A stretch of 64,000 nt of DNA from Heterodontus francisci (Eukaryota): the NCBI RefSeq assembly GCF_036365525.1, contig NC_090404.1:4588001-4652000 (forward strand). The letters run 5' to 3'. Below the pieces are notes generated by a model that saw only the letters and a program-made list of their open reading frames with translations, did no database searches and was not told where the DNA came from. Below, piece by piece: positions 4,901 through 40,329 of this stretch. Every line of letters starts with the position of its first letter. The stretch's first letter is position 1. A program made the translations under genes and the position numbers.

Positions 4901-4940
4901 CCTGAGCCTAACGAGTACGATGCAAACCTGAAGTACTGCG

Positions 4941-5433
4941 GGGCTCATGGCGCAGAAATGCAAGGTGATGTTGGAGATCAGGGCATTGCCAATCGCTAGC
5001 TCAGTAATCTTGGCATCTTTTGTCAACATAGAAACAAACCAATTAATGATGTCGGTGTTCCTGTGTACATTCCCTCCATTACGATGAAGCATACACTGTG
5101 CCGGCTGCCCAGGGTGCTGACTGCACCAGTACATATAAGTGTTAGAATCGTTTCTCTTTTCAAGCTGCACAGTCGTGTGATGTTACTTTTCTCTTCAATT
5201 GTCATTTCAAGGACAGTCTGTTCAATTGTGTCTTGGTGGTTCAATTATAAGAGAATATCATAGTAATAGTCATGATTAGAAGCATTATCATCACCACCAT
5301 CTCAATGAACATAATTATCATCATTTGACCAATAATGAAACCTAGGTTGCAGCAGGGAAAATGCATTTTTGCTTGAAAGGAAACATTACAGTAAAGTAAT
5401 TTAATGATGATTAACAGTGTGAGCCTGTTCCAT
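4941..5433 (-). pseudogene. TCR alpha/delta-type V pseudogene 1 (leader ~5390-5433, V exon ~4941-5245)
   Basis: Two frames join to give DTIEQTVLEMTIEEKSNITRLC.../..NTYMYWCSQHPGQPAQCML...FVSMLTKDAKITELAIGNALISNITLHFCAMSP (Cys 5167-5169, Trp 5126-5128, Cys 4952-4954). Defects: frameshift, mutated acceptor, degenerate heptamer CGCAGTA (4934-4940), no nonamer, leader 2 bp short. Confidence 0.7.
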
Positions 5434-5640
5434 ATGATGCTTTCTGAGTCTGTAACTCTGCAGTCTGGAAAATCCGCTGTCTGAGCGAACGCATTTCCTA
5501 ACCCACTGACCTTCTAACTCAGCCAGTGCCAAACAGGGAACAGTGACAGCAATCTCTCCATAAACACAGGGGAAGCAAGGCGGCTCAGAGCCAAAGCAAC
5601 TGAAGTTTTGCGGGCGGGGCTGCCGCGGGGGCAGTGTTGA
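5434..5640 (-). promoter_or_regulatory. Putative V promoter of pseudogene 1
   Basis: Directly 5' of the leader ATG, contains a GC box (GGGCGGGG) and aligns by eye with 16889-17075. Confidence 0.5.
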
Positions 5641-5885
5641 CACACGGAGGATTCATTTGTAAGGAACTGAATTCATTCATAATGTCTCAATCTGAAATTG
5701 TATAACTCTACCTGTCTCGAAGAGTTGTTTTACTTGCGAAATTATTGCACATTCGCTACAAGCAGGCTTGCGATATGAAAGACAGAATTATTATATTATT
5801 TACAAGTTACCGAAATCTTCATCAGTGAAGTGGGTTAAAACTCGGGTGGGAATGTAACGGTGGGAAATGGAATGAAATGTTAATA

Positions 5886-6435
5886 AAAGCAAAATACTGC
5901 AGATGTTGGAAATCTAATCGGACAAGGTCACAGAAAATAACTGAGCAGCAGGTCATGGACCAAAGGCAGCGGTATGTTACTGGTGTGGTCACATACAAGC
6001 GTTACTGCAGAGAGGGTGCAAATTGACAGAAAAAGAACAGCCCTGACCCCAAGCACAAGCATGGAAAAAACTGTGAGTAGGCACAATAGAAACAAACGAA
6101 GCAAATTAAAGTAAAATAAAAGAAACAAATAACAAAGAAAAAAGAAAAAATAACTAAGAATAAAAATTAAAAGGTGGGTCCGTCATGCACTGAAATTTTG
6201 AACTCATTGTTCAGTCCGGCAGGCTGTCGTGTGCCGAATCGGTAAATGAGATGCTGTTCCTCGAGCTTGCGTTGTCGTTCACTGGATCACTGCAGCAATC
6301 CCAGGACAGAGATGTGGGCATGAGAACAGGGGGTGTATTGAAATGGACAGCAACCGGAAACTCGGGGTCGTGCTTTCGGACTGAGTGGAGGTGTTCCGCA
6401 AAGCGGTCACCCAAACTGCGTTTAGTCTCCTCGAC
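5886..6435 (-). mobile_element. Penelope-like element 3' fragment (GIY-YIG endonuclease C-terminus)
   Basis: LGDRFAEHLHSVRKHDPEFPVAVHFN and RKLEEQHLIYR..RQPAGLN, plus the terminal repeat at 5886. Confidence 0.75.
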
Positions 6436-6751
6436 ATTGGGGACGGAAGTGACTGTTCAGAGTGGTAGAAATGGACGGGAGAAGAAATTCCAGCCGGTCG
6501 AATAACAACACGGCGCTGTTTCTTCCTTTCCAGTTCTGTAAGGTCGCAGTCTCTATTTCTGAAGTTCAGACTGGAACCGCAGAGATAAAACTCTGCCTGA
6601 CACCACTTATTGTCCTGATCACAGGTCGGTACCATTAGAAACTCCCTGCAACATTCGCCAATCATCATTAAATTTCCCATCTCCAGCTGTGGGTCACTTT
6701 CACTTTATTGTACTTCATCTAACATGCTGTGTGTCCGCTGTTTATTTTCAG

Positions 6752-7058
6752 AGATGGGTAACAGAGACTCAGGGCTCCAGTAAGAACAAGGAGTTGGATC
6801 AGTAAATTTAGCAATAATCTATAGTTGTTCTGCATTGTTTCACTTGCCAGCTGTAACCTGTTCTGGTATCACCAGTATCCACACCGAGCTCCTTAGTATC
6901 TGTTCAGAACCGATAGTCACGGCAAGAAGGAAACGGCTCCCGGTTTTGAACACTTCAGCGGTAATCTCAACCGGATGCAAGGCACTTTTCTCCTGCCTAT
7001 GAAAGGCTTGAGGATCACAGACAACGACTATTATTACTGCACCATAAGACCCACAGTG
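6752..7058 (+). pseudogene. TCR alpha/delta-type V pseudogene 2
   Basis: Acceptor TTTATTTTCAG ends at 6751. Translation LFWYHQYPHRAP*YLFRT...FSGNLNRMQGTFLLPMKGLRITDNDYYYCTIRP, stops at 6781 and 6894. Perfect heptamer CACAGTG at 7052-7058 but no recognisable nonamer. Confidence 0.8.
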
Positions 7059-7935
7059 AATAAGATTCCTCGAGCAGAACACAGGTCGGCATTAAGGGTG
7101 GGCGCCAAGAAAATACATGGGATTGAATCCCAGAGAGTTTGCACAGAAAATGAAGGGAATATGCACTTTTTCCGAGCTGTTTTCTCAGTCAGTGCTCTCA
7201 CCGTTGTGAAAGGTAACATTTTTGTAGCATTTGAATCTAGGGTCAAATTCAGATATTCCCAGCTACCTGTTAACAATGACTTGCAGATCTCTGGGATGAA
7301 TAACAGGATCGATCTGTCCAAGTAACATATCCGTCAGGCCACATCTTGCAAAGTTTCTGGAATTGCATTGGTAACAAAAGTGGCTGAATGAAATCATCAC
7401 TTTACTGGTACAAGTTGAACATAAGTGATACCGCACAACGATTTGAAGAGGAGTGGCTACTTATAATGTCCCTGATAGCCTTAGGACTGTAGCAATGATG
7501 TTCATGGTCGGGAGGGTATTCATTCATACCAGGGCTTGAGAGCAAATCGAATGATTTCACCTTAATTAGAGAGAGATCTATTTCTCATATAACATAAAGA
7601 TATCCAGTTAGACAACAATGGAGACAATGTGAGAAAGAAGCAGAAAGACTGCCAACGAGATAAACAACAAGTGACTGAGACAGGGAGAAAGACGCACAAA
7701 CGTATTCAGGGAAGAAAGTATTGGTGAGACAAAGCAGTAATTAGTACTCAACGAACCTGATTGGTTCACAGCTAACATAATATCTGAGCCACCAGCCAAC
7801 GTAACCCAGAGAAACACCCGTCCGTTTTCCAATAAGTGAATTCTGCCTCGATCAAAGGTCATTCTTCAATATCGGATTGGAAAATTAACAATTAAAGCAT
7901 TCTGCTATTTTCAGTCGAACGCTAAACCAGACAGC

Positions 7936-8402
7936 ATGTGCTTCCTACGTTTCTTACTGATGATACTGGTCTTGTTGTCCGGTGAACCTATGTTTAAATG
8001 ATCAGTGTGTCCTCCATTGGTTATATTCAGTCTTTTGATTTTGACTTCTGTGTATTGTTACAGGAATGAGTGGTGACGATTCAGTGTCCCTGGACCCACT
8101 TGAATTAACGGTTCAGGAAAGACGGGTGGTAATTCTGAACTTTAGTTACACGACAGCGTAGCCTGACTTAAATCTCTTCTGGTACATGCAGTATCTGAGG
8201 GAAGCTCCGAGATTTTACTGAGAACATGCGGCATGATAAAGGGGGATAAATCTCCAGATTTTCCGGATTCTGGTGAATTGGATAAAGACAAGAAAACAGT
8301 TCCTTCAAAGGTCGACGGGGCTCTTGTCTCTGACTCTGCGGTGCGTTACTGTGTCCTCCGCCCCACACTGTCAGAGGAGCGCAGTAAGTCAGTACAAACA
8401 TG
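7936..8402 (+). pseudogene. TCR alpha/delta-type V pseudogene 3 (leader 7936-7981, V exon 8064-8363, 23-RSS 8364-8402)
   Basis: Leader MCFLRFLLMILVLLS. V: DSVSLDPLELTVQERRVVILNFSYTTA*PDLNLFWYMQYLREAPRF/...ELDKDKKTVPSKVDGALVSDSAVRYCVLRP. First Cys is Phe (8141), TAG at 8159, frameshift near 8214. RSS CACACTG-23-ACAAACATG. Confidence 0.88.
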
Positions 8403-9138
8403 GCAAAGGACTCTCACCTCCTCTCACTGAATCTGGATTGTTATCTGATAATGGAACACAAACCAAACTATGGAGGGAAACACATGGGTCAATTTATAGA
8501 TGGGTAGTTCATTAAACAGTTAGAAAGATAAATGGACAGTCTCCCCGCCTTCACTTTCTCATTCAATGATCACTTCCTCCTTTGTTTTGAAAGTATCCAG
8601 CTGCTGCAGACAAACGCCTGTGAATTCCGGCTGTGGAGTCTGTGAGTATAAAGCTCAGTGTGTTTCACAGCTCAGTAAGGGGTTGGTTCTTGTTCGTTTG
8701 GGAGCTGAATGATGAGATAGTTGGACATTAGCACTTCAGTCATCACTCCGATTGCCCGACTGCAACATAACCAAGAGGTGGATCGGATCATGAAGAATAT
8801 AAAACAGTTAACTCTGGATATAACTTTAAATTAAACTGCGGAATTATAGCTTAGGGACACGGGTTCAAACTATGAAAGGTCATTTCAGGACCGGTATCAG
8901 GAAATTCTTCAGCAATCAATGCGTGGAATCAAGTTCCAGATGCAACAGAAGATGGTCAAACCTGGGAATAATTTCATTAAATGATGGATATTCCAATGGC
9001 GAAGATAGGAGCAGGATGGGGTTGGAGGCATGTTGGTGTTAGACAGTCTATCCTAAGAGTGGCAGAATTCCAACTCCCGCCCTGCATGATCCTGTGATCT
9101 TGTGATCAATCGCAGGAGTCGGCAATTTCTTTTGGACA

Positions 9139-9172
9139 TGCAGTCGCTTGTAGTCACCAGCAGAGGGCACTA
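9139..9172 (+). promoter_or_regulatory. Candidate CTCF-binding element with upstream motif
   Basis: Core CCAGCAGAGGGCACTA (9157-9172) preceded 18 bp upstream by TGCAGT. Confidence 0.6.
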
Positions 9173-9703
9173 AATGTCTTCACTGTGTTGGTGTCAATGT
9201 GGAAGCGACTGCAGCTTCAGTATTGAGTAACTTTACTGAAGAAGCGGATTGAAGAAAAGTTTCGGTAACAGAACCATTCATTTCAAATGGAAGTTGTTTT
9301 TATCAATGTCATGATGAAGGAATAAAATATTATTACTAATGGCGATATTCTGCATTTTTTAACAAGCAGATCACCACAGAATCACTCAGTCCATTTGTTG
9401 CGACACTCCGCCACTCTCCTCAAAGCTGTTAATTATTCCCTATTGCATTCAAGTAAAAGGCGCTGGCTGTCTCGTTTATCTGCAGAACAACTGCAAACTT
9501 GTTATGCTGGCTGTGGAAATTCTAATGAGCAGTACACAGCTCTTCTCGTGGAATTCAATGGCACAGATGCCAGGACAACATGAATTATTTTCCTCATGCA
9601 CCAGCCTCACAGACTGGCTCTGTTAAAGGGCCAACATTGAGTTTTAACCCCGTCCAGTTCCCTGTTGTGAGAGCAATTTCATTGGACTCCATGTTCACTG
9701 CTC

Positions 9704-9860
9704 TGATGTCATCAATTCTGGATGAAAGGACCGAAGAGCTGATTGGATGAATTGCAATACTAATGCGCTGAGTGCTGATTGGATGAACTGGAGAATAAAG
9801 GATTTGTGATCTGATTGGACGAATTAAACAACAAAGGACCCGTGAGTTGACTGGATGTCA
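9704..9860 (+). promoter_or_regulatory. V promoter with CRE-like site and phased inverted CCAAT boxes
   Basis: TGATGTCA at 9704-9711. ATTGG at 9742, 9778 and 9814 and ACTGG at 9850 give an exact 36-bp period, 140-290 bp upstream of the leader of pseudogene 4. Confidence 0.5.
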
Positions 9861-9992
9861 CCTGCTGTCCATGCCAGCAATGGACCTATTGGGAGAAAGG
9901 CTGGATATCGAACAGCATCTTCTAAAGGCCTGATGAAAACAATTCCAGCTTCAATCAGTTCAGTTCATATCAGCCCACAACTGTCTGAAAAC

Positions 9993-10806
9993 ATCTTGGA
10001 TGTTACTTTATATTTATTCCTCACAGCTGCAGCTCTCTCAACTGGTAAGTTCACAATTTACACAAGGCCGTCTTTCACATCTTGATCATATAGTTCATCG
10101 GTCTGTTCCCTGAAGACAAGGGTAACAATCGATTGATCAGAAGTGAACAAAGCAATCCGGATCTACCTTGAGTCTGAACACTGTTTGAGCAAACTCGACA
10201 AGCTCCCCCAATAAGAGAAATTTGAAGAGTTGAGCTGAGATTACAGGGGAATGGCTGACAGACATGTTCCTCCCCACCAGGGCTAATGACAGACACCGAT
10301 ACACACACGAGTCTTACACCCACAGGTCGTTTGTCGGCTTCCCTTTACAGTCGATCCCAGCACCTTCCTGTTGCAGCTTCTGAACTGTGGAAAGTGTATT
10401 TGTGTTTACCTGTCCTGATTTCTCAGTTAAGTATTGGGGCTAACGGGCTGATTCTGGGAGATAGACGTTGGTTAATTTAATATTGCTCTGTTCTTGCAGG
10501 ACATTGTCGAGGAGACTCCATTTCACAGTAACCAGCTGTAATCATAGTAAGTGAAGGAGACGATGTTCGGTTGCACTGTGATTATACAGCTACAAGCAGC
10601 AGCAATCCTTACCTATTCTGGTACCGTCAGTATGCCAGTGGATACATGGAATATCTGCTGCAAAGAAACAAATACAGTGAGGACCGAGAAAGATTTCCAG
10701 AGGACCGTTTTTCAGCGGAGCTCGATGATTCGATCCGAACCGTCCCGCTGAAAGAATCTAAAACAGAACTGACAGACTCTGCGGTGTACTACTGTGCACT
10801 GAGACC
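9993..10806 (+). pseudogene. TCR alpha/delta-type V pseudogene 4 (leader ~9993-10044, V exon 10500-10806)
   Basis: Leader (I)LDVTLYLFLTAAALST|GTAAGT has ATC where ATG is expected; an in-frame ATG exists at 9933. V: HCRGDSISQ*PAVIIVSEGDDVRLHCDYTATSSSNPYLFWYRQYASGYMEYLL...RFSAELDDSIRTVPLKESKTELTDSAVYYCALRP, with a single TAA at 10529-10531. Confidence 0.92.
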
Positions 10807-10845
10807 CACAGAGACACAGAGCTGGGCTGATCCTGTACAAAAACT
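10807..10845 (+). other. 23-RSS of V pseudogene 4
   Basis: CACAGAG, 23-bp spacer, ACAAAAACT; near-consensus. Confidence 0.93.
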
Positions 10846-12445: not shown

Positions 12446-12459
12446 TGTTACGTGTGCTG

Positions 12460-14583: not shown

Positions 14584-14822
14584 CTGCTTCTCTCTCCACA
14601 GATGCTGAGTGTTTCCATCACGTTTTATTTTTATTAATGTTTTTGTGTCCAGCTCTTACTGACCCTCCCTCACACGGGCAACAGTTTCTCGTTATTCACT
14701 CTATCAAAATCCATTTTTTTTCAAATGTCACTCAGTGATCTTTTATTCTTTAAATTTTATCCTGCTTTTGTTGGGATTTACTATTCACACATTCTCTAAA
14801 TGTTTCTCTCTCGATCCTGCAG

Positions 14823-15167
14823 AGAGCGGCCTTGAAGGCATCACTCATCAACCAAAAGAAGATGTGACAGCTCGGGGAGGAGTGATCTGCACCATGACCA
14901 GCTCCTATACTGAGGTGACGAGAGTTTGCCTGGACTGGTACCGGGATGGTCTCTCCGTGGATCCGGAGAAATTCTCATCCGCTGCACCGATGGGTTCATT
15001 GACAATTCGTCTTTTGCAAGCCGGCGCTTCACCACATCTTTGGTCAAAAAATACACGGCCGTCAGTGAAACAGTTTCACAGGTGACAGCTGCCGATACCA
15101 GGAAATACTTCTGAGTCTTAACACCGCACACAGCCGTGTAGGTTGGGAAAGAGCCGATACATAAACT
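14823..15167 (+). pseudogene. TCR delta-like V pseudogene 5 with extra CDR1 cysteine (V exon 14823-15128, 23-RSS 15129-15167)
   Basis: Acceptor CCTGCAG. Translation SGLEGITHQPKEDVTARGGVICTMTSSYTEVTRVCLDWYRDG.../EILIRCTDGFIDNSSFASRRFTTSLVKKYTAVSETVSQVTAADTRKYF*, with the second Cys replaced by TGA (15112) and a frameshift near 14968. RSS CACAGCC-23-ACATAAACT. Confidence 0.8.
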
Positions 15168-16878: not shown

Positions 16879-16879
16879 G

Positions 16880-19439: not shown

Positions 19440-22400
19440 ATTCATTGAAACCCTAATTAACTAATTAATTAATAAATAGAGGAGCAACTACACCGAAGGG
19501 AGGAGATTACAGCATTTAATATTTATAGTAGAAATCTAGCGCTAGGGACCATATAGTTAATTGTAACTTTATTTAGTAAGGATTTAATAAGTATTTCTTT
19601 TAAATTAATTTATTAATTAGTGCTAGAAATGTCTGTTAGAGGTGTAAAGTGCTTCATTGTGAGATGTGGGAGGTCCGTGACACTTCCAGCATTGCGGACA
19701 ACGTCATCTGCAAGAAGTGTACCCAATTGCAGCTCGTCACAGACCGCATGGATCGGTTGGAGCAGCAATTGGATGCGATTAGGAGCATGCAAGTGGTGGA
19801 TAGCATCATAGACAGGAGTTTTAGAGACGTGGGTACACCCAAGGTGCATGCAGATGGATGGGTGACCGCTAGAAGGGGCAGGCAGTTAGTGCAGGAATCC
19901 CCTGTGGCTGTCCACCTCTCTAACAAGTATACCGTTTTGGATACTGTTGGGAGGGATGGCCTATCAGGGGAAAACAACAGCAGCAGCCACAGCAGTGGCA
20001 CCACGGCTGGGACTGTTGTTCAACAGGGAGTGACAAAGCGCAGAAGAGCATTAATTCTTGGGTACTCTATAGTCAGGGGCACGGATAGGCACTTCTGAGG
20101 ACGTGAACGAGACTCTCGGATCGTATACTGCCTTCCTGGTGCCAGGGTCAAGGATGTCTCTGAACGGGCAGGGGGCATTCTGAAGGGGAGGGTGAACAGC
20201 CAGAGTTTGTGGTACACATTGGTACCAACGACATAGGCAGGAAGAATGACGGGGTTCTGCAGCAGGAATTCCGGGAGTTAGGTAGTAAGTTAAAAAACAG
20301 GACCTCTAGGGTTGTAATCTCGGGATTACTCCCTGTGCCACGTGCCAATGAGACTGGAAATAAGAAGATAGTGCAGCTGAACACGTGGCTAAACAGCTGG
20401 TGGAGGAGGGAGGGTTTCAGATATCTGGATCATTGGGGTCTCTTCCGGGGCAGGTGGGACCTGTACAAGAAGGATGGGTTGCATCTAAACTGGAGGGGCA
20501 CAAATGTCCTGGCCCCGACTTTTGTTAGCGTCACTCGGGAGGGTTTAAACTCGTGTGGCAGGGGGGTGGGAACAAGAGCAGTTGGTCAGCAGGTGAAACA
20601 ACTGAGGGGGAACTAGTAAATAAGGCCAGTAAGACTGAGAGGAAGAGCAGGCAGGGAGATGTTGCTGAGCACTGCGGGACTGGTGGTCTGAAGTGCATTT
20701 GTTTCAATGCGAGAAGTATAACAGGTAAGGCAGATGAAATTAAAGCTTGGATTAGTACTTGATGTTGTTGCTATTACAGAGATTTGGTTGAGGGAAGGGC
20801 AGGATTGGCAGCTAAATGTTCCAGGATTTAGAAGCTTCAGGCGGGATAGAGGGGGGTGTAAAAGGGGTGGGGGAATTGCATTACTGGTTAAGGAGAATAT
20901 CACAGCTGTACTGCGGGAGGACACCTAAGAAATACCTCGGCAGCGAGGCAATATGTAGAGCTCAGGAATAGGACGGGTGCAGTCACAATGTTGGGAGTTT
21001 ACTACAGGCCTCCCAACAGCCAGCGGGAGAGAGAGAAACATATATGTAGATAGATTTTGGAAAGATGTAAAAGCAACAGGTTTGTTGTGGTCGGTAATTT
21101 AAACTTCCCCTGTATTGACTGGGACTCAATTAGTGCTAGGGGCTTGGATGGGGCAGAATTTGGAAGGAGCATCCAGGGGGGCTTCTTGAAACAATGTGTA
21201 GATTGTCCAACTAGGGAAGGGGCCGTACTGTACCTGGTATTGGGGAATGAGCCCAGCCAGGTGGTCGATGTTTCTGTAAGGGAGCATTTCCGGAACGGTA
21301 GCCATAATTCCGTAAGTTTTAAGGTACTTGTGGATGAGGATAAGAGTAGTCCTCCGGTGAAGGTGCTAAATTGGAGGAAGGCTAATTATAACAATATTAG
21401 GCAGGAACTGAAGAATTTAGATTGGGGGCGGCTGTTTGAGGGTCAATCAACATCTGACATGTGGGAGTCTTTCAAACGTCAGTTGATTAGAATCCAGGAC
21501 CGGCATGTTCCTGTGAGGATGAAAGATAAGATAGGCAAGTTTCGGGTACCTTGGATAACGAGGGATATTGTGAGCCTAGTGAAAAAGTAAAAGGAAGCAT
21601 TCGTAAGGGCGAGAAGGCTGGGAACATACGAAGCCCTTGAGGAATATAACGAAAGTAGAAAGCAACTTAAGCAAGGAATCAGGAGGGTTAAAAGCGGTCA
21701 TGAAAAGTCTTTGACAAACAGGATTAAGGAGAATCCCAAGGCTTTATATACGTATATAAAGAACAAGAGGGTAGCCAGGGTAAGGGTTGGTCCACTCAAG
21801 GACAGAGGAGGAAACCTATGCATGGAGTCTCAGGAAGTGTGCGAGGTACTAAATGAGTACTTTGTATCAGTATTCACCCAAGAGAAGGACTTGGTGGATG
21901 ATGAGTCCGGGGAAGGGAGTGTAGATAGTCTGGGTCATGTCGATATCAAAAAGGAGGTGTCTTGAAAAACATTAAGATAGAGATGTCCCCAGGGCCTGAT
22001 GGGATCTACCCCAGAATACTGAGGGAGGCAAGGGAGGAAATTTCTGGAGCCTTGACAGAAATCTTTGTATTCTCATTGGCTACAGGTGAGATCCCAGAGG
22101 ACAGGAAAATAGCCAATGTTGTTCCTTTGTTTTAGAAGGGTGGTAAGGATAATCCAGGAAATTAGAGGCCGGTGAGCCTTACGTCAACGGTAGGGAAATT
22201 ATAAGAGAGGATTCTTCGGGACAGAATTTATTCCCATTTGGAAACAAATGGACTTATTAGCGAGAGGCAGCATGGCTTTGTGAAAGAGAGGTCGTGTCTC
22301 ACTAACTTGATCGTGTTGTTTGAGGAAGTGACGAAGATGATTGATGAAGGAAGGGCAGTGGAAGTTGTCTACATGGACTTCAGTAAAGCCTTTGACAAGG

Positions 22401-23485
22401 TCCTTCATGGAAGATTGCTACAAAAGGTGAAGTTACACGGGATCAGAGGTGAGCTGGCAAGATGGATGCAGAACTGGCTCGGTCATAGAAGACAGAGTGA
22501 AGCAGTGGAAGGGTGCTTTTCTGAATGGAGGACTGTGACTAATGGTGTTTTACAGGGATCAGTGCTGGGACCTTTGCTGTTTGCAGTATATGTAAATGAT
22601 TTGGAGGGAAATGTAGCAGGTCTGATTAGTAAGTTTGCGGACGACGCAAAGGTTGGTGGAGTTGAGGATAGTGATGAGGATTGTCAGAGGATACAGCAGG
22701 ATATTGATTGGTTGGAGACATAGGCAGAGAAATGGCAGTTGGAGTTTAATCTGGACAAATGTGAGGTAATGCATTTTGGAAGGTCTAATACAAGTGGGAA
22801 GTATACAGCAATGGCAGAACCCTTAGGAGTATTGACAGGCAGAGCGATCTGGGCGTACAGGTCCAAAGATCACTGAAAGTGGCAACGCAGGTGGATAAGG
22901 TAGTCAAGAAGGCATATGGCATGCTTGCCTTCATCGGTTGGGGCATAGAGTATAAAAATTGGCAAGTTATGCTGCAGCTGTACAGACCCTCAGTTAGGCC
23001 ACACTTGGAATATTGCATTCAATTCTGGTCGCCATACCACCAGAAGCATGTGGAGGCTTTGGAGAGGCTACAGAAGCGGTTTGCCAGGATGTTGCCTGGT
23101 CAGGAGGGTATTAGCTACCAGGAGAGGTTGGATAAACTCGAATTGTTTTCAACGGAACGACGGAGGTGGAGGGGTGACATGATAGAGGTTTACAAAGTTA
23201 TGAATTGCATGGACAGAGTGCTTAGTCGGAAGGTTTTTCCCAGGGTGGAAAAGACAGTTACTAGACGACATAGGGTTAAGGTGCGAGGGGCAAAGTTTAA
23301 AGGGGATGTGCGAGGCAAGTTCTTTACACAGAGGGTGGTGAGTGCCTGGAACCTGCTGCCGGGGGAGGTGGTGGAAGCAGGTACGATAGTCGCGTTTAAG
23401 AGGCATCTTGACAAATGCACGAATAGGATGGGAATAGAGGGATACGGTCCCCGGATGTGCAGAAGGTTTTAGTTTAGACAGGCAT
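19440..23485 (+). mobile_element. Near full-length CR1 LINE (ORF1 zinc finger/coiled coil plus SGNH esterase; ORF2 APE endonuclease plus RT), disabled
   Basis: CEMWE..CKKC, G.SIVRG..CLPGA..HIGTND, FNARSI, YYRPP, GFVK.RSCLTNL, YMDFSKAFDKV, FADD, FTQRVVSAWN. Multiple stops and frameshifts. Confidence 0.92.
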
Positions 23486-24719: not shown

Positions 24720-24728
24720 TTACTTAAC
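24720..24728 (-). CDS. IGHM: IgM TM2 exon (VK-stop)
   Basis: TTTTGCAG|GTT AAG TAA, completing the conserved KVK cytoplasmic tail. Confidence 0.9.
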   Translation of the reverse strand, partial: VK

Positions 24729-24860: not shown

Positions 24861-24988
24861 CTTCACCAGAGTGACGGCAGCGCTGTAGAAAATGCTCAGG
24901 AAGAACAGGATGATGAATGTGGAAGCGGTTGTCCAGATGTTGCCGCTCTCTTCCTCATTGTCTTCAATCCAGATGTGGCCTGAGTAAT
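24861..24988 (-). CDS. IGHM: IgM TM1 exon
   Basis: (D)[42 protein letters not shown]|GTGAG, carrying the conserved antigen-receptor TM motif; 128 bp, phase 1/0. Confidence 0.93.
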
Positions 24989-25499: not shown

Positions 25500-26470
25500 C
25501 ATTTGAATGCTACTTTCACATATCGCCTGGTGCTTTTGTTTGTACGCTTTAATACATGTGTATGTGTGCATAAGTATCTGTTACTTTTCATCACTCAGTG
25601 CGTGTCCATGGCTTGTGTGTGTGAGATTTAATGTATGTTTTAATGCGTTTCTTTGTGCACCCGCCTGTGAATGTCTCAATGTGCGTATTTATATCTTGAT
25701 GCCCGTGTGTTGTGTCCCTGTATGTTAGTATGTGCTTATGTGCCAATGTGTATCAATGTGTGTTTTCAAGTGGCCGCGTGTGTGTGTATGTGCATGTGCG
25801 TGTGTATAAAATATATCATCCTTAATGTTTTGTCTTCATTCATCCATGTGTGTGCATGAGCATGATAATGTTTGTTTTTGTGTGTGGTTTGGTCCCCATG
25901 CGTGCTTCATGTTGTGAGCATTTGTGTTGACAGATGTCTTTATGTTTTCCTGTGCGTCAATGTGTGTTTATGTTTCCATGTGTGCGTATGCGTTTGTTAA
26001 TGTTTGTTTTGTGTGCTTCTGTCCCCATAAGTGTGATAATGCGTCTGCTTTTGTGTTGATGTCTACGTTTATGCATTAATATGTGTGATTATGTGTACAT
26101 GTGTGCTAATGCGTGTGTTATGTGCATGTTTTTGCATCCATGTATGTGTCATAATGTTAATGTTGGTGTCTATTTGTGTGTGAGTGATCGTGTTAATGTG
26201 TCTGTTTAAATGTTTGAGTGCAGATGTGTTTGTCTGTTAATGTGCGAGTATGTTTCCATCTAGCTGTGTTTATGTCTATGATAATGAAAGCTTTTCCGTC
26301 TATGTTTCTGTGTTTGTGAGACTGTACTAATGTGTACATTTATGTTTATTTTTGCGTGGGTGACTGTGAAGTGTTTATATCTGCGTTTGAGTCTGTTTGT
26401 GTGTGTAGGTGTAAGTGTGTGGTTGTGCATTTGAGTGTGTTTATGTGTGTGTTTTTGTCTGTGTGCCTGC
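25500..26470. repeat. Degenerate TG/CA-rich low-complexity tract in the CH4-TM1 intron
   Basis: About 1 kb of interrupted (TG)n. Confidence 0.8.
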
Positions 26471-26632
26471 GCATCTTTATTCTTGTTCAAAGTTTTACAG
26501 AGAATAAATAACCGGGTCTGACCCTGACGGTGTGCATTATGGAGAATATTCTTCACTGTTCTGTGTATAAATGTATTCTGTGCGAGATGTCATCTGACAT
26601 CATCTGAATGACTGCAACAATGCAACTGATGG

Positions 26633-27792: not shown

Positions 27793-28187
27793 TCATTGAC
27801 ATGAATTAACGGTGTCCAACAGTGCAAGGGAAATGTTCACAAAACTCGGTTTACCGCTGGATTTATTAACTGTTCTGTTGATGATCTTCAAGGGGATCGC
27901 TTCATGTCCCACCACACAGGAGTAAGAAGCGCCGCTGGCCCACTCCTCTGCTGCAATGGATAACAGGCTGTAGATGAAGAAGGAGCTCTTGTCGTTCTCC
28001 GCCATCACCTCGGTGTTCTTGTAGTTGCCGGGATTCACCGACTTGTCATTGACGGTCCACTTGACGAAGATCTCTCGGGGGGAGAAACCTCGCACTAAGC
28101 AGGTGAGGGAGAGGAACCTCTCTGCGGAGATTTCTTCTGCTGGGGGCAGGAGAACAGACACAGACGGTTCCCGCAGATCTTTCCATG
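27793..28187 (-). CDS. IGHM: IgM CH4 exon plus secretory tail (internal TM donor after 27855)
   Basis: TTTTTCAG|(A)[15 protein letters not shown]...[17 protein letters not shown]...YSCVVGHEA...NKSS G|GTAAA. Tail [20 protein letters not shown] has an N-glycan site and the penultimate Cys. Confidence 0.97.
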
Positions 28188-28657: not shown

Positions 28658-28963
28658 CTTCCTTGTGGATGGCATCTCTGAGAGGAGTCGGCAGATCCTG
28701 ATGGCTCACCACACAGTAGAACACAGCCTCACTCAGCCAGGCTTGTGTCGAGATGTCTACAGTGCTGATCACGCTGTCGGGATCCTCTCCGGGTTGGACG
28801 GCAATCTCTGATTTCAAAGGCTTCTGTTCTTGTGTCCAGGACACGTTGACACCATAAGGAGCATTAGACACGACGCAGGTTAAGGTGACCGTCGCCTCCA
28901 GTAAGACCTGTTCTATTGATGGTGGCAGTAGTTTAATTACTGGATGATTGCACTCGGAAGAAT
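28658..28963 (-). CDS. IGHM: IgM CH3 exon
   Basis: CTACAG|(D)[31 protein letters not shown]...[22 protein letters not shown]|GTGAG; 306 bp, open. Confidence 0.96.
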
Positions 28964-30367: not shown

Positions 30368-30685
30368 CTGGCGATCCGGTGATGTTTCGGCTTTGGGTGG
30401 CCGCTTGATGGGAGACCTGGCAGGTATAGACCGTGTTGGTGAACCATTCCCGAGCGGGGACTGTCAGCCGACTGGTCGCTGAGAAATTCCCGTTCGTTTC
30501 ACAGGCGGGAGAGGTGACGAAGCCCGATTCCATGGGATGTCCATCCTTCAACCAACTCACGGTTATTGCTTCTGGATGGAAATCGATGATTGAACACACG
30601 ACAGTTGCAAATCTGCTGCTTGTGATTTCTTCACTGGAAGTCTGGGTGAGGATAACCGTTGGATGGACGATGTCACCTTTACAAT
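30368..30685 (-). CDS. IGHM: IgM CH2 exon
   Basis: TTGAAG|(D)[12 protein letters not shown]...[23 protein letters not shown]...VYTCQVSHQ...ITGSP G|GTAAG; 318 bp, open. Confidence 0.96.
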
Positions 30686-30897
30686 CTTCAAGAAAAAACA
30701 TGTTAGACATTTCTAGAAGAAGTTAATAACTGATACAAACTGTTCTGATATTTTAACAGGTTATTTGCATCAAGCAGGCACTAACTGATGTTTCCAGGGG
30801 TCTGCACTGTGCACAACACTCTAAATGTGGAATAGCCAATGTTCTACACAAGATCCTTCTAGCTTTTCTGTTTTTCCACAGTTTCCACAACACTAAC

Positions 30898-31194
30898 CTG
30901 GAATTTCCTTGATCCAGAGCGACTCGCCGCGTCGAACCTCGCAGTAGATTTTGCTGCTTCCCACCTCTGACTCGGTGATGGTTAATTGGCTGCTCAGGGT
31001 GTAGGTTCCCTTCTTGTTCAGCACTGACGGGTAAGTCTTCAAACCAGTGGTGATCGGTTCTTCACCTTTCTTCCAGGAAACGCTGGTGATTTGGGGGATG
31101 TAGTCCATCGCCAAACAGCCGTAGGCCATGGAGCCATCGGTGTTGGGTTGTTCACAGGAGCACAGGCCGTAAAGAGTTGGGGGAGACGGTGTCG
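30898..31194 (-). CDS. IGHM: IgM CH1 exon
   Basis: TCCTAG|(A)[43 protein letters not shown]...[18 protein letters not shown]|GTTAG; 297 bp, open. Confidence 0.97.
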
Positions 31195-34689: not shown

Positions 34690-35090
34690 CACTGTGGGGA
34701 AAACATTCTCAGATCAGGTACAGGACAGTTAAGCTGCAAAGTAAAGATCCCTCTATACGGCCCTATCATGAGTTGTAATCTCAGACATCGCAAGTGTTAA
34801 ATTCCGTAGAAAGCCGCCTCTAGACTACACTGTCACTCTGGGTCAGGTACACCATCTGTTTAATATAAAATAAAAATTCCCTCTACGCTGTCCCATCAAA
34901 TATATCCAGGACAGGTTCAATCCGGTTTAGATACTGAGTAATTCCTCCCTCTACGCTGTCCCCATTAAGTAGTCCCAGGACAGTTACAATATAGATTAAA
35001 TATACAGGAAGACTTCCTCTACATTGCCGAATCAATCACTCCCAACGGAGGCACATTACTGATTACAAACTGACCAAATCTCCTTCTGCT
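34690..35090. repeat. Degenerate ~65-bp tandem repeat
   Basis: Repeated TCCCTCTAC(G/A)CTGTCCC..CCAGGACAG..TTAGATAC. Confidence 0.65.
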
Positions 35091-37583
35091 GTCCGTCTGT
35101 TGTGTCTCTGAACTGTTATTTCTGACTGCCACAGACTGGAATTATGATCTCATTGCTGAGGCGCCTCATCAAACTTAAAGTCAAACTTTTAGGTTTCTCG
35201 GGGGTACAAGTTTCTTAATTAAATGGATCAAGTTGCACTCCTTGAAATGAAACGAACCAGTCTGTTTGCAACCTGCAGGGAGGATTCCTCGTCCTGACAC
35301 AGTGAGCAGGCGCACAGAAACAGAACAGACACAAACGGTGCAACAATCGGGCTCTCAGCAGATAGATCTGTTCAATTGTCAATTTCAATGAAGCTGTTTT
35401 ATTCTAGTTCATCAATTGTCAAATTGTGACCACTCCAAGTCTGTATACTCTTTGAAATTAAACTGATATTCATTTCAAAAACTCCCTTCGACCTCCAAAT
35501 GTTTCTCCCTGTCTGTTTACAATCTTAAAAGCATGTAAGAAAGTTTCGCTTAAAATGAGTACATCAGAAGAATACACATTCAGGAAAATTAGATGTCCAT
35601 AACCAGAACTCAGTGACAGAGTAAGAATTTAGAAAATCAGGAGATATGTATCTTGCAAACTGATTACCCACTGATTTGACACAATTTCATAATTCAATTT
35701 TACAAAAAAAATTAGTTGAACCACTGCTCAAAGTTAATTCATTAAAATCTGCGGTGATACTTGATTGAGCTGAGAACAGCTGAGTAAGAAATGTATTGTT
35801 CTCTAAGTTATTGCCAGACATAATGAATTAATCTCTCCGATTCTTGAGATTTTGCACTCATTGGAATCCTGGCAAGTATACTATTGAATTGTGGGAGGTC
35901 ATTTATGTTTAGTGAATTAGCACTATTATATTCTAAGCTAATATTCATGTTAGCTGATTTTATACTGCATTTATCATTTATAAATAAATAAAAATAAATA
36001 AATTAGTTAATATTACTTCAAGACCAGTTTCTGCCTGGCACCTTGTGAATTAATGGAGTTTTAATTAAGTTATTATGACACTTTATCAGTATTAAATAAT
36101 TAACGTCATATTAATAGATGAAAACCTTCAGACAAATATATTACTTCATGCTGAAATCGAATCACAGTGCAATAATTTAAAATGAACAATAACTTCTCGT
36201 CCCGCCCTGCTTTCTCTCTACAAACTTGTAAACTGGGCAGGTATCTGAATGCGTTGATATATTATAAGCTCCTTCCATTCTCAGCCAGTATTTCACACAA
36301 TGTATTTAGCCTGGCCGGGGTCACATGTCACTAACTGGGCTGCAACATGGCATGTTTGTGAAAGCAGCTCTCCCGTGTTTAAATATCGTTATAAATCTTA
36401 ACTATATGAGATAAAATATCTAAAACATCCGGGCACTTTGCGATCAGTAACTATGCTGCCACTATTTAATCACACGATGTTTTTAGATTTTACTCCCGTA
36501 ATTCACAAATTAATTGCAAAATATATTTTGATTTTTATTGAAAGAAGTTCCAAAATGATCACTGCAAAACTGGACAAAAACAACTCTTTCAGATCATCTG
36601 TGACATTGAAACCTAATGAGCAAATGTAGCCGAGATTTGGCGGATCAATTTAATATTTATTAAGCATAACTCTCAGGTATAATCTGTTCTTTGTCTATCA
36701 TTCCATCCTGCGTGCAGCACAACTATGGGAGACAGGATGTTGTTACTGAATTCAAAACTAACATTAAACTTTTGTAATTAATTGAATCTGCTTGAATTTC
36801 CAGGTGTTGTTTGTTTGTCTTTAGCCTTACGCAGTCTGCAAGTTTCTTCAAGTTAAATAAAATCATATGCACAATTCTTTGACTGCCATTGACCTCTTCT
36901 CCCAGGAAAATGGTTAATATTAGATTAGTGATAATTATCGCACTATCCAACAACAAATGACATTGAAGAAGGAACATGGAAGAACATGAACGCAAAGAAT
37001 GTAATAACCGGACAGATATATTACACTGACAAACTGCAATTTACAACGCCTATTTAAGTTGTAAGTAAATACAAGCTGACATTCACCTGTTTTAATCAGG
37101 AATATCACAATTAATTTAAAAGCGCTCATTAACCTGAAAACAGCACTGGAATAAGTACACTCTTATTGAAATAATTTCAAGCACAATTAAAAATAGTCTC
37201 CAGTCATAAAGTTTTCCGGTCACGACAATTGTGCGCTTGGCACGCCAGAACTGTAAAAGACGATTCTTGAATAATGAATCGATATTAATATGAAAGCGTA
37301 TTTGGTTTATATGAGGACATATTGCCGCATTATAATTGTTTGAATTGTATTAATTTTACTCTCCAATCTGCAAACCTGCTACTTATTCAGTTTGTAATTG
37401 CAGTAACATTTCACGGATTGAAGGAGCGTTACAAACCATGACTTAACAGTTCAATCTGCAATTATCATTTAAATTTTTTTAAATGCCTTGAAATATCTTT
37501 TTATTTTATTTCTGAAATCTGCCTGTTATCCGGCTTTCGAATCGTCTTTGAAGCAGTTTCAAACAAATAGAATGTATCCATTT

Positions 37584-38453
37584 GATCAGAAAACCTGCAG
37601 CCGCTCGATGTCACCCGGGTTAAACAAAGCAGAAACGCCAAATAGTTTTACAAATTTTACTTTGGAACACAGAGACACACTCTCCTCAGCAGATAAGCTC
37701 CAACTCACATCACTGAGGGGCTGAATCCCGCCTCAGTACGTTTCAAGGCGAAGCAGCTTAATTTCACAATCACTTTCAGTAGAATCAAATGTAACATCCC
37801 AAAAAAAAATCTCAATACAGAATCCACCGAGCCTGCCTGTCTCTGAATTACCAAATATATAAAATAAAGGCAGCAGATTTGTTAGTACAGAGAGCATGTT
37901 TAATAAATTAATATTGATTCTGTAGCATATTTCATTGATATTGCCTGATATCACTGCATTATTGAAAGTGAGGTTATATTAATGTAAATCTGGCCAAAGC
38001 TGCAAATTTGTTATTTCTGCAGTTCTTAATTACATCAAAATTTATTGTATTACATATGAGCATTCGTAAGCAGTAGATTGATAGATAGCAATTTAATTAC
38101 CACAAATAAAAATAGATCAAAATATCAGAAGGCTATTTTTGACCACTGAAGCTTTCTGCATAATTTTATTTCAAACATATTTAAAGACTTATTGTTTCTA
38201 TTAGATCAGAAAACCTGCAGCAACTAGATGTCACCCAGATTAAACATTGCAGAAACGTCAAACGGTTTAACAACAGTTTGGTATTTAAAGTAGCCCAAAC
38301 ACTCAGTCCCATCAACAAATAAACACCAAATCACATCAATCTGGAGCTGAATCCTTCAACAGCACCGTGTGTAAAGAAACCATTAAGTTCTTTAATCCTT
38401 TAGCAGCAGAATCACGTAAAACATTGCAACAAATTCGCAATATAGAATCCACC
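37584..38453. repeat. Diverged ~250-bp direct duplication 3' of JH (37584-37828 and 38204-38453)
   Basis: Shared GATCAGAAAACCTGCAG, GATGTCACCC, GCAGAAACG, TCACATCA, GCTGAATCC and GAATCCACC in the same order, offset ~620 bp. Confidence 0.75.
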
Positions 38454-38553
38454 AAATCCACTTTTCAGTGAACGAATGTATCATGACAAAAAACAGAAAT
38501 ATAAAATTAAAAACACAAATAAAATAGTTAATGAATAAATGTATTTTTCTTAC

Positions 38554-38601
38554 CTGCAGTCACCGTCACCATGGTCCCTTGTCCCCAGTAGTCAAGATAG
38601 T
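38554..38601 (-). CDS. IGHJ: IgH J segment, with 23-RSS at 38602-38640
   Basis: YLDYWGQGTMVTVTA|GTAAG; CACAGTG-23-ACAATAACC. Confidence 0.97.
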
Positions 38602-38994
38602 CACAGTGTTACATTCCCTGGGCTGGGTCACACAATAACCGGCTCTGCACAGAATAGTGAGAAATCCATTATTATTTTAAATATCCACACTCCAGAGGCA
38701 AAATCAAATCTTGATGGTTCTTTGTAAAATTATAACTGTGTTAATAATTCTTTTCACTCTTTATAAATTTCCCTGATGTTTTATATTTCACACAGTAACA
38801 TATCAGCAATTATTGAAATCACCAACTGATGAATGAATAATTAATCCGTTTATCCAAAATAAACCGTGCTAGGAGGACAGTGCTGGACACAAATAGTACT
38901 TCACTGTATATATAGTTGTATTGTTAAGGCGAGCTCTGACCCAGAATCATCAATTAGTGCTGAGGGAGTTTTTGTATTGACAGTAACTGCTGTG

Positions 38995-39007
38995 CCACCC
39001 AGTATAT
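38995..39007 (-). other. IgH D2 segment ATATACTGGGTGG with 12/12 RSSs (38967-38994 and 39008-39035)
   Basis: CACAGCA-12-ACAAAAACT on the J side and CACAGTG-12-TCAAATACT on the V side; open in all three frames. Confidence 0.95.
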
Positions 39008-39385
39008 CACAGTGAGACAAACCGTGTCAAATACTGCGGCGGACTGTTAACTGTGAAATACAGAGATTACATTTCACAGCGCTCTCAAAAACATGATTCC
39101 GATTCCCCTAAGAGTACATCAGTGAGATAATTCAGTTTATACCTGTCATTATATTTATAAAGGAGATTGGAATATTTCTGAATCATCTGTGCTGATTCAG
39201 CGTGACAGTCAACATGAATGAAGCTGGAGACTTTTATGCAATTTTACAAATCTTTATTGCATTTCCCCAATTTTTTATTTAATCCTCATTGTTTACGGAC
39301 CATCTGCCGTGTTAGTGATCGCTGGTTTGTGCAAACTCCCTGTATGGGGTTTTTGTATGAGGAATTCGCTCTGTACAGCACCGTG

Positions 39386-39400
39386 ACCCACTGCTGTACC
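39386..39400 (-). other. IgH D1 segment GGTACAGCAGTGGGT with 12/22 RSSs (39401-39428 and 39348-39385)
   Basis: CACAGTG-12-ACAAATACT on the V side and CACGGTG-22-ACAAAAACC on the J side; open in all three frames. Confidence 0.95.
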
Positions 39401-39811
39401 CACAGTGACACGAACCTGCACAAATACTGCACTCACTCTCTGTTCAGTACTGCCTCCCACTATTCACTTCAAATAGAAATTCACTTCTGATCTAATTCAG
39501 AATATATTCAAAAGTTTACACCATGCAGGAGTAATTGAACCAAGTAACTCCCTCCAGGTCTCAGTCACATTAAAACCAGCATCTTATCCAGATCTGCAAT
39601 TGCTGACACTGTAAACATTAAAAATCAGCACAGACAAAATTACTCATCAGTACTTCGGTTAGTGTCTGAGATTTGTACCATTGAATTTTCACTGTGCTAG
39701 CTCTGTCAGAGACGGTCTATGGCCTGGTTCTGAACAACGCCGTTAATATTGTATTTAATAAAATTACTGACCGTCAGTTTATGATCGAAGTTGTCGAATT
39801 CCCTCTCCATG

Positions 39812-39850
39812 TGTTATTGTACATGTCCAGCCCTGGTTCCTCTCGTTGTG
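39812..39850 (-). other. VH 23-RSS
   Basis: CACAACG-23-ACAATAACA. Confidence 0.9.
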
Positions 39851-40155
39851 ATCTCTTGCACAGTAATAAATGGCGGTGTCTTCAGTCTTCAGTTTCTTCA
39901 TGTCCAAAGCGAAGATGTTTTTTGAAGTGTCTTTGGACGCAGTAAATCGATCTTTAATCTCCGGGGCGTAGTTGTTGCTGGATGAACTGTAGTAGTAAAC
40001 TATCCACTCCAGCCCCTGCCCGGGAACCTGTCGGATCCAGTACATGCTGGAGCTGCCAAGAGTGAACCCGCTGGTTTTACAGGTCAGTCTCAGGGAGCCT
40101 CCGGGTTTCCCGGTCTCTGCCTCTGGCTGAGTCAACACGACATCCGAATGGACAC
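39851..40155 (-). CDS. IGHV: IgM VH exon, intact
   Basis: TACAG|(R)[101 protein letters not shown]. Confidence 0.98.
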
Positions 40156-40283
40156 CTGTAAAAAAATATCAAAAACCCCGAGGATTAATCCTGGTGAAAT
40201 GATTCCTGACTCTATAACTTTCCAGAGAGAGACTAACACTGAGACGGTAACAGTGAGAGACTCGGACAGTAAAAACTACTCAC

Positions 40284-40329
40284 GGGATAAGAAAACCAGT
40301 AACAGACTGAGAGAAATCGCCGACCTCAT
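40284..40329 (-). CDS. IGHV: VH leader exon
   Basis: MRSAISLSLLLVFLS plus 1 nt, then GTGAGT; 46 bp. Confidence 0.95.

What the first reader, a model, noticed from the sequence alone, without database searches (positions are those of the whole stretch)
4934..40329. Complete intact IgM cluster physically joined to a TCR alpha/delta V field
Seen: every element of a functional IgM gene (L, VH, D1, D2, JH, CH1-4, secretory tail, TM1, TM2, RSSs, splice sites) lies 9.6 kb from the nearest TCR-type V RSS (15129), with no gap in between. Established: sharks have clustered IgH genes and make IgHV-TCR delta chimeric transcripts, and IgH V segments or truncated Ig clusters are known inside shark TCR alpha/delta loci. 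Inference: a cluster with all C and TM exons intact beside TCR Vs could serve both B-cell IgM and T-cell IgV-TCR delta in cis. It may be a relic of ancestral Ig/TCR linkage.
Basis: partly seen in the sequence, partly recalled or inferred. Interest (0 to 1): 0.78.

Follow-up and report, generated by a model that had tools for sequence, protein, structure and literature searches.

The report
IgM cluster beside dead TCR-V genes
A complete, working-looking shark antibody (IgM) gene cluster lies about 10 kb from five T-cell-receptor-type V gene segments, but all five are broken relics, and this mixing of antibody and T-cell-receptor genes was already published for other sharks and rays in 2025.

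Summary
On the minus strand, 40329-24720, lies a 15.6-kb shark-type IgM minicluster: split leader, VH, D1, D2, JH with the expected recombination signals, four C-mu exons, secretory tail, TM1 and TM2. All frames are open. Public contigs that behave as RNA show this VH family spliced leader-to-V, rearranged V-D-J, and spliced to C-mu. Five TCR-like V segments lie at 4.9-15.2 kb with no N run in between.

All five are pseudogenes with stops, frameshifts or a lost start codon, splice donor or cysteine. The nearest one (RSS at 15129) is of uncertain V class. They converge tail-to-tail on the IgM gene among LINE debris. No TCR D, J or C was found in the window.

IgH clusters linked to TCR alpha/delta, with TCR-type V exons between them, were published for four other elasmobranchs in 2025 (PMC12227049). 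Earlier notes of this scan report the same "IgM plus five dead Vs" pattern on other DNA of this genome. Cis dual use is neither shown nor excluded. This is an ordinary local example of a known layout.

The parts
40420..40428 (-). TATA-like TATTTAAAT upstream of the leader. RNA-like depth reaches into 40343-40400.
   Evidence: Read; depth bins and one adapter-like loose end at 40387. No perfect octamer within 670 bases upstream.
40284..40329 (-). Leader exon (ATG at 40329, phase-1 GT donor)
   Evidence: The leader-to-V splice is seen as joint 40152->40281 (cut +3) and as matching loose ends.
39851..40155 (-). VH exon, open, ends ...YYCARD
   Evidence: Pfam V-set E 8.6e-19. Best named relative is the Heterodontus francisci Ig heavy chain V region, 82% identity, E 1.7e-47.
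39812..39850 (-). VH 23-RSS: CACAACG, 23-base spacer, ACAATAACA
   Evidence: Read by eye (below the threshold of the scan). The V ends of the RNA joints lie at 39851-39858.
39348..39428 (-). D1 (coding 39400-39386, GGTACAGCAGTGGGT) with a 5' 12-RSS and a 3' 22-RSS (CACGGTG...ACAAAAACC)
   Evidence: D1 letters appear between V and J in RNA-like contigs (table 5c, compared by eye).
38967..39035 (-). D2 (coding 39007-38995, ATATACTGGGTGG) flanked by two 12-RSS
   Evidence: D2 letters appear in junctions (table 5c, by eye).
38554..38640 (-). JH (38601-38554, YLDYWGQGTMVTVTA) with a 5' 23-RSS (nonamer 38640-32, heptamer 38608-02) and a GT donor
   Evidence: The J ends of the joints lie at 38589-38601, and the loose end at 38554 equals the CH1 start.
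30898..31194 (-). C-mu exon 1
   Evidence: C1-set E 2.9e-11.
30368..30685 (-). C-mu exon 2
   Evidence: C1-set E 1.1e-20.
28658..28963 (-). C-mu exon 3
   Evidence: C1-set E 1.7e-09.
27793..28187 (-). C-mu exon 4 with secretory tailpiece (ends ...NSCQ, stop 27795-27793). Internal TM splice donor after 27855. AATAAA at 27764-27759.
   Evidence: C1-set E 1.9e-21. Residues 4-129 align with solved IgM mu chains, E 2e-48 to 1e-47.
24861..24988 (-). TM1 exon (acidic spacer plus membrane span ...[24 protein letters not shown])
24720..24728 (-). TM2 exon (VK, stop). AATAAA-type signals lie downstream.
19640..23469 (+). LINE copy (GDSL-esterase-type ORF and reverse transcriptase), part of the LINE debris filling 15.2-24 kb
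   Evidence: Pfam Lipase_GDSL_2 E 1.1e-10 (20209-20613) and RVT_1 E 2.7e-18 (22238-22720).
14822..15167 (+). V relic e. Frameshift near 14958, TGA where the second cysteine belongs (15112), RSS CACAGCC-23-ACATAAACT at 15129-15167. V class uncertain.
   Evidence: Weak PDB matches to antibody heavy chains, E 0.03-2.2. Weak local matches to the TCR-type set, E 3e-4 and 0.006 in an 84-protein set. No hit with TCR-type queries.
10400..10845 (+). V relic d, TCR alpha/delta type. TAA at 10529-10531 in FR1. No ATG in 10300-10440. Leader donor reads CAG|TT. Otherwise open. RSS CACAGAG-23-ACAAAAACT at 10807-10845.
   Evidence: V-set E 5.2e-12. Relatives include 'T-cell receptor alpha/delta variable 27.0' and a TCR alpha chain. 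TCR alpha chains dominate the single-V PDB hits.
8045..8402 (+). V relic c, TCR alpha/delta type. Several stops, a frameshift between FR2 and FR3, first cysteine lost. RSS CACACTG-23-ACAAACATG from 8364.
6768..7058 (+). V relic b, TCR alpha/delta type. Stops in FR1 and FR2. Heptamer CACAGTG at 7052, nonamer decayed.
   Evidence: Weak V-set E 0.004.
4928..5226 (-). V relic a, V-set, on the opposite strand. Frameshift in CDR1. No recognisable RSS.
   Evidence: V-set E 0.051 only.

Best explanation
This is one ordinary, self-contained elasmobranch IgM minicluster. It lies in the antibody/T-cell-receptor gene neighbourhood of cartilaginous fish, and its 3' flank holds LINE debris and five dead TCR-alpha/delta-type V gene relics.

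How the cluster works (shown by sequence, and at family level by RNA-like contigs):
- RAG joins VH (23-RSS) to D1 (12/22), D2 (12/12) and JH (23) within the cluster.
- The leader is spliced to V, and JH is spliced to C-mu 1-4.
- Use of the CH4 stop and tailpiece gives secreted IgM.
- Splicing from the internal CH4 donor to TM1 and TM2 gives the B-cell receptor. This step is inferred from the sites.

The TCR-type Vs contribute nothing. They are decayed passengers, left over from the time when IgH clusters and the TCR alpha/delta V array were intermingled or duplicated together (inferred).
For: - Complete open exons and canonical signals.
- Pfam V-set and four C1-set matches.
- CH4 plus tailpiece aligns end to end with solved IgM mu chains.
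- VH is 82% identical to a horn shark VH.
- In four runs of one sample, depth on leader, V and J is 1e5-4e6 in X1, X6 and X7 (thousands in X9), against 0 to 1e2-1e3 between them (5e3 in the bin next to J). 14 of the 15 listed joints are V-to-J, with junction letters that hold D1 or D2 stretches. The loose end at the JH donor is the first 19 bases of this CH1.
- All five TCR-like Vs carry disabling lesions.
- Only LINE domains were found in 109 further ORFs of the flanks and the big intron and in the 15-24 kb block.
Against: - The contigs were laid at 95% likeness or more. In X1, 9700 of 16015 were only 95-99% alike. Expression is therefore shown for the VH family, not strictly for this cluster.
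- The runs are labelled 'RNA?' by guess, and their tissue is unknown.
- Relic d is nearly intact in its V exon and could be open in another haplotype.
- Contiguity across the LINE block was not checked with reads.
- Absence of TCR use of this VH rests on listed rows only.
Confidence: 0.85

Rival explanations
1. The cluster serves two lineages in cis: IgM in B cells, and in T cells its VH rearranges to TCR delta D-J on the same chromosome to give IgHV-TCR-delta chains.
For: [quoted passage not shown]
- The VH 23-RSS is of the right class.
- Unchecked notes of this scan place NAR-TCR cassettes and a TCR-delta-type constant gene about 3.9 Mb beyond the window on the same piece.
Against: - No TCR D, J or C was found in the window.
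- The listed loose ends at the JH donor in all four runs are C-mu.
- No V-to-foreign junction is among the listed rows.
- The adjacent TCR-type Vs are dead, so they do not mark an active TCR V field.
- Many sister clusters would be equally placed, so nothing singles out this one.
Confidence: 0.1
2. The juxtaposition is an assembly artefact: a misjoin inside the LINE-rich 15-24 kb stretch glued an IgM cluster to unrelated TCR-V-bearing DNA.
For: The interval is made of LINE fragments, which are classic places for misjoins. No read evidence across it was obtained.
Against: - No N run lies in the interval.
- The same kind of neighbourhood is published for four other species.
- Unchecked notes of this scan describe the same 'IgM plus five dead TCR Vs' arrangement 11 kb and 91 kb beyond the window and 122 kb before it. 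A single misjoin would not produce that.
Confidence: 0.04
3. The TCR-type Vs are functional orphon V genes that still feed the TCR alpha/delta repertoire.
For: Relics c, d and e keep 23-spacer RSSs. Relic d keeps a 91-codon open V body.
Against: 5 of 5 carry stops, frameshifts or lost key residues. Relic d also lacks a start codon and a GT donor for its leader.
Confidence: 0.01

Closest known systems
Horn shark (Heterodontus francisci) type IgM heavy-chain minicluster, VH-D1-D2-JH-Cmu. The original papers are recalled and were not read here. The 'minicluster' organisation is stated in PMC12227049, section 4.
   Same: One VH, two Ds, one JH, four C-mu exons, secretory tail, TM1 and TM2 in 15.6 kb. 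RSS spacers run 23 / 12-22 / 12-12 / 23. VH is 82% identical to UniProt HV01_HETFR.
   Different: Nothing structural. It is one more copy of a large family.
Elasmobranch antigen receptor complex (AgRC): IgM, IgW and IgNAR clusters linked to TCR alpha/delta, with TCR-type V exons between IgH clusters (Flajnik et al. 2025, PMC12227049)
   Same: An IgH cluster within 10 kb of TCR alpha/delta-type V exons. One V is of intermediate or unclear class, as that paper also mentions.
   Different: [quoted passage not shown]
- It holds no occurrence of 'pseudogene', 'orientation', 'horn shark' or 'Heterodontus'.
- Here the Vs are shown to be dead and convergent with the IgM gene.
- Its table S1 could not be opened, because supplements are closed.
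TAILV / VH segments inside TCR delta loci, and IgHV-TCR-delta trans-rearrangements of nurse shark. Criscitiello 2010 was seen only as a reference-list entry. Deiss 2019 is recalled, and TAILV is mentioned in PMC12227049, section 15.
   Same: A VH with a 23-RSS on what is probably the chromosome that carries TCR alpha/delta.
   Different: This VH sits in a complete IgM cluster with its own D, J and C, not beside TCR delta D-J. No chimeric transcript was seen.

Membership tests
Elasmobranch IgM minicluster | Single VH with split leader and 23-spacer RSS | tested here: met
Elasmobranch IgM minicluster | Two germline-separate D segments (12/22-23 and 12/12 RSS) and one JH with a 23-RSS and a splice donor | tested here: met
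Elasmobranch IgM minicluster | Four C1-set C-mu exons and a mu-type secretory tailpiece with a penultimate-region cysteine | tested here: met
   CH4 and tail align with solved mu chains over residues 4-129.
Elasmobranch IgM minicluster | TM1 and TM2 exons reached from a cryptic donor inside CH4 | tested here: met
   Sites and frames fit. The splice itself was not observed.
Elasmobranch IgM minicluster | Rearranged and expressed with C-mu | tested here: met
   V-D-J joints and the J-to-CH1 loose end in RNA-like contigs. This holds at the level of the VH family (95% likeness or more). One contig covers CDR2 with no difference (record 28, X9).
Functional TCR alpha/delta V gene segment | V-set body most like TCR alpha/delta V | tested here: met
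   Clear for relic d. Relics b and c match by tblastn. Relic a is weak. Relic e is unresolved.
Functional TCR alpha/delta V gene segment | Open frame with leader, both cysteines and splice sites | tested here: not met
   0 of 5
Functional TCR alpha/delta V gene segment | 23-spacer RSS | tested here: inconclusive
   Present in c, d and e. Heptamer only in b. None in a.
Functional TCR alpha/delta V gene segment | Lies upstream of TCR D/J/C on the same chromosome | not testable with these tools
   None found in the window. Only unchecked scan notes place a TCR-delta-type C about 3.9 Mb away.
Antigen receptor complex (AgRC) of PMC12227049 | IgH minicluster with TCR alpha/delta-type V exons beside or between clusters | tested here: met
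   This report; definition.
Antigen receptor complex (AgRC) of PMC12227049 | Synteny with TCR alpha/delta C genes, PSMB5 and UrIg2 | not testable with these tools
   These lie outside the window.
VH used by TCR delta (TAILV / trans-rearrangement) | Transcripts joining this VH to TCR delta D-J-C | tested here: inconclusive
   None among the listed rows. Tissue is unknown, and 85 loose-end rows and 170 joints were not shown.

The most novel reading that the evidence does not exclude
The block 'five dead TCR-V relics, LINE debris, IgM cluster' is a duplication module that has been copied many times along this chromosome. Unchecked scan notes report the same pattern 11 kb and 91 kb beyond the window and 122 kb before it.

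Its best-kept relic RSSs are those at 10807 and 15129. They have the same polarity and 23-spacer class as the JH RSS. They might be retained because they act as cluster-deleting elements. A join from the D2 3' 12-RSS to a relic RSS would excise JH and all of C-mu, as the kappa-deleting element does in mammals, and would silence that cluster.

The module part alone is likely, at about 0.5. The deleting-element part is bold.
Probability: 0.05. Interest if true: 0.6.

Novelty: new member of a known kind. Interest (0 to 1): 0.2.

Why it matters
It is a clean, fully annotated example of a germline, rearrangement-competent IgM cluster embedded among TCR alpha/delta V remnants. It supports the published view that IgH and TCR alpha/delta arose and long stayed together.

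It adds two modest details that the main text of the 2025 paper does not state:
- The intercalated TCR-type Vs here are all pseudogenes.
- They converge on the IgM gene.

If the block proves to be a repeated duplication module, lesions shared by the relics would give a built-in clock for ordering the expansion of IgM clusters. By itself it does not open a new question.

Tried and rejected
- the VH query was cut in the wrong frame, so its VH rows are meaningless. The search was repeated correctly.
- the Pfam call failed because my exon coordinates were out of frame. I corrected them and re-sent them.
- V class of the relic at 14.8 kb. PDB gave only weak antibody-heavy-chain matches, E 0.03-2.2. 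A local blastp against the 84 proteins fetched here slightly favoured the TCR-type set, E 3e-4 and 0.006 against 0.09 and 1.6. The question is left unresolved. The hit counts printed are HSP rows, not proteins, and I do not use them.
- Octamer upstream of VH: no perfect match within 670 bases.
- Other genes in the window. I scanned 109 of the 233 stop-to-stop ORFs of 70 aa or more. I left out 67 ORFs in 10.9-24.7 kb, and the other 57 fell outside the five stretches I selected (chiefly the V-relic and IgM-exon spans). Only RVT_1 (3 ORFs) and Exo_endo_phos_2 (1 ORF) were found. Exons shorter than 70 codons would be missed.
- Criscitiello 2010 (PMC3222143) is not held, so it is cited only from reference lists.
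- The search of earlier findings was blank near the place, by sequence and by words.
- Not done, because the family scans left nothing open: the big representative search, structure prediction, the atlas search and a third word search.
Exons were searched one by one.
- Contiguity and cluster-specific expression could not be pursued further.
- Claims that something is not in print rest on searches and on the 'find'. Supplements, including table S1 of PMC12227049, were not opened. They may list pseudogene status, or this species.

Full report
**What is there: the IgM cluster.** The window is 64 kb with one N run, 42094-42477. On the minus strand I read a complete IgM heavy-chain minicluster. Borders were located and translated.
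- A leader exon starts at ATG 40329 and ends with a phase-1 donor after 40284.
- After a 128-base intron comes a VH exon, 40155-39851, ending YYCARD.
- The V RSS follows: CACAACG, 23-base spacer, ACAATAACA.
- D1 (39400-39386) has a 12-RSS on its 5' side and a 22-RSS ending in a perfect ACAAAAACC on its 3' side.
- D2 (39007-38995) has 12-RSSs on both sides.
- JH (38601-38554, YLDYWGQGTMVTVTA) has a 23-RSS and a GT donor.
- After a 7,359-base intron come CH1 to CH4, each with an AG acceptor, phase 1 and a GT donor.
- CH4 runs into a secretory tailpiece and stop (27795-27793), with AATAAA 29 bases later.
- An internal G|GTAAAC donor after 27855 fits in frame to TM1 (24988-24861) and TM2 (24728-24720).
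- The span from ATG to the TM2 stop is 15,610 bases.

**Is it more than chance?**
- Pfam gives V-set E 8.6e-19 and C1-set E 2.9e-11, 1.1e-20, 1.7e-09 and 1.9e-21 for the five Ig exons.
- CH4 with its tail aligns over residues 4-129 with solved immunoglobulin mu constant chains, E 2e-48 to 1e-47. The single higher row is a multi-domain IgG hybrid.
- All 72 candidates of the VH word search passed E 1e-10. The best is the UniProt horn shark 'Ig heavy chain V region' at 82% identity, followed by catshark and bamboo shark proteins at 78-79%.
- In my RSS scan of both strands of the whole window, 8 of 11 rows lie in the 1.1 kb between 38602 and 39696.

Each exon was searched on its own.

**Is it used?** The look-up of sequencing runs listed 14 runs with coded names. 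I laid X1, X6, X7 and X9 (one sample, labelled 'RNA?' by guess, kept as contigs) on 38400-40400.
- They behave as RNA. Summed depth is 1e5-4e6 on leader, V and J in X1, X6 and X7, and thousands in X9. Between those exons it is 0 to 1e2-1e3, except about 5e3 in the bin next to J.
- Of the 15 joints listed (170 more not shown), 14 run from 38589-38601 (J) to 39851-39858 (V end). One is the leader-V intron.
- Of the 12 junction strings listed (411 more not shown), at least 6 hold 8 or more letters of this cluster's D1 or D2. One holds D2 and D1 in the germline order. This comparison was by eye against the D letters printed.
- The loose end at the JH donor in X1 (20 contigs) and X6 (21) is identical to plus-strand 31176-31194, the first 19 bases of this CH1. 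The longer loose ends in X7 (16 contigs) and X9 (3) begin with the same 19 letters, then differ from the window at one later letter, as a sister cluster would.
- Limits: contigs were accepted at 95% likeness. In X1, 6315 of 16015 were 99% or better and 9700 were 95-99%. The result therefore holds for the VH family. Contigs covering the V-D-J spacers with 2-7 differences per 100-180 letters point to close sister clusters or alleles. One contig (record 28, X9) covers CDR2 without any difference.
- No V-to-non-J junction is among the listed rows, which does not exclude one.

**The 'TCR V field'.** tblastn with the window's own exons and with 12 TCR-type V proteins finds V-like sequence only at the IgM exons and at 4.9-5.15 kb (minus strand) and 6.77-7.07, 8.0-8.42 and 10.4-10.85 kb (plus strand). 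Nothing lies beyond 40.2 kb.
- Relic d (10.5 kb) is clearly TCR alpha/delta type. V-set scores E 5.2e-12. All 12 candidates of the word search passed; their names include 'T-cell receptor alpha/delta variable 27.0' and a lizard TCR alpha chain, and the best identities are 51% (medaka) and 46% (elephant shark). In the PDB the top four rows are multi-V constructs, and below them TCR alpha chains dominate.
- Every relic is disabled.
  - a: frameshift in CDR1 and no RSS.
  - b: stops in FR1 and FR2, nonamer decayed.
  - c: several stops, a frameshift and a lost first cysteine.
  - d: TAA at 10529 in FR1, no ATG anywhere in 10300-10440, and a leader donor reading CAG|TT.
  - e: frameshift near 14958 and TGA in place of the second cysteine.
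- Relic e owns the RSS at 15129 (CACAGCC-23-ACATAAACT).
- The class of relic e is open. It gives weak antibody-VH matches in the PDB, E 0.03-2.2, and slightly better weak matches to the TCR-type set in a small local search.

**Surroundings.**
- Four relics are on the plus strand and the IgM gene is on the minus strand, so they converge tail to tail.
- The 15.2-24 kb between them is LINE debris. Of 10 LINE-like ORFs scanned, 4 match RVT_1 and 1 matches a GDSL esterase. The RVT_1 match at 22238-22720 and the GDSL match at 20209-20613 lie in this interval.
- In the rest of the window (1-4.9, 31.3-38.5 and 40.4-64 kb), 109 ORFs of 70 aa or more hold only RVT_1 (3 ORFs) and an endonuclease domain (1 ORF).
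- I found no TCR D, J or C and no second Ig cluster.

**What is known.** Flajnik et al. [quoted passage not shown] - The proximity supports rearrangement of IgM and IgW VH to TCR delta D segments.

The main text has no occurrence of 'pseudogene', 'orientation', 'horn shark' or 'Heterodontus'. Its table S1 was not available to me. My other searches turned up no paper on this locus in this species.

**Earlier notes of this scan** (unchecked AI notes). They describe, on other DNA of the same genome:
- intact IgM genes beside five decayed TCR-type Vs, 11 kb and 91 kb beyond this window and 122 kb before it;
- further mixed sites megabases away;
- NAR-TCR cassettes and a dead TCR-delta-type constant gene about 3.9 Mb beyond;
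- a guess that the species is horn shark.

I reached the pseudogene and 'already published' verdicts before seeing them. From the notes I take two leads: that the block is a repeated duplication module, and (from one first-reader note) that relic RSSs could delete IgM clusters. I checked only the geometry here. The RSSs at 10807 and 38602 are both heptamer-to-nonamer on the plus strand with 23-base spacers. A join from the D2 3' 12-RSS to a relic RSS would therefore be deletional and would remove JH and C-mu. Nothing shows that this happens.

**Verdict.**
- The best explanation is an ordinary, autonomous, expressed-family IgM minicluster with decayed TCR-V passengers inside the known elasmobranch antigen receptor complex (confidence 0.85).
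- Novelty: a new member of a known kind.
- Interest is low (0.2).

Noticed in passing
window 59776-60494: Tandem array of a 34-base unit, 21 copies, 85% matches. Purpose unknown, probably a satellite within repeat debris.
   Followed up: no
window 53381-53864 (ORFs 52.0-53.9 kb): 27-base minisatellite, about 18 copies at 65% matches. It gives long repetitive open frames ('DPVSVYITL...') on the plus strand, with no Pfam match.
   Followed up: partly
window 39696 (minus strand) and 35298 (plus strand): Stray RSS-like sites. A perfect CACAGTG with a 24-base spacer and ACACTAACC lies 150 bases downstream of VH. Another perfect heptamer with a 24-base spacer lies inside the J-C intron. No joint listed uses the first one.
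   Followed up: partly
window 10807 and 15129 compared with 38602: The RSSs of V relics d and e have the same polarity and 23-spacer class as the JH RSS. A D2-to-relic join would therefore delete JH and C-mu (geometry). The idea was first raised in scan note s1-872405. There is no evidence of use.
   Followed up: partly
window 38400-40400: RNA-like contigs at low depth cover the V-D1, D1-D2 and D2-J spacers with 2-7 differences per 100-180 letters (tables 3 and 8). These may be germline transcripts or DNA carry-over from close sister clusters or alleles.
   Followed up: no
window 20209-20613: The LINE copy at 19.6-23.5 kb carries a GDSL-esterase-type ORF upstream of its reverse transcriptase.
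   Followed up: no
window 26260-26556: A His/Thr/Lys-rich repetitive open frame, which looks like a simple CA-rich repeat, lies in the CH4-TM1 intron.
   Followed up: no
window 42094-42477: The only N run, 384 bases, lies 1.8 kb upstream of the IgM leader. It was left untouched.
   Followed up: no
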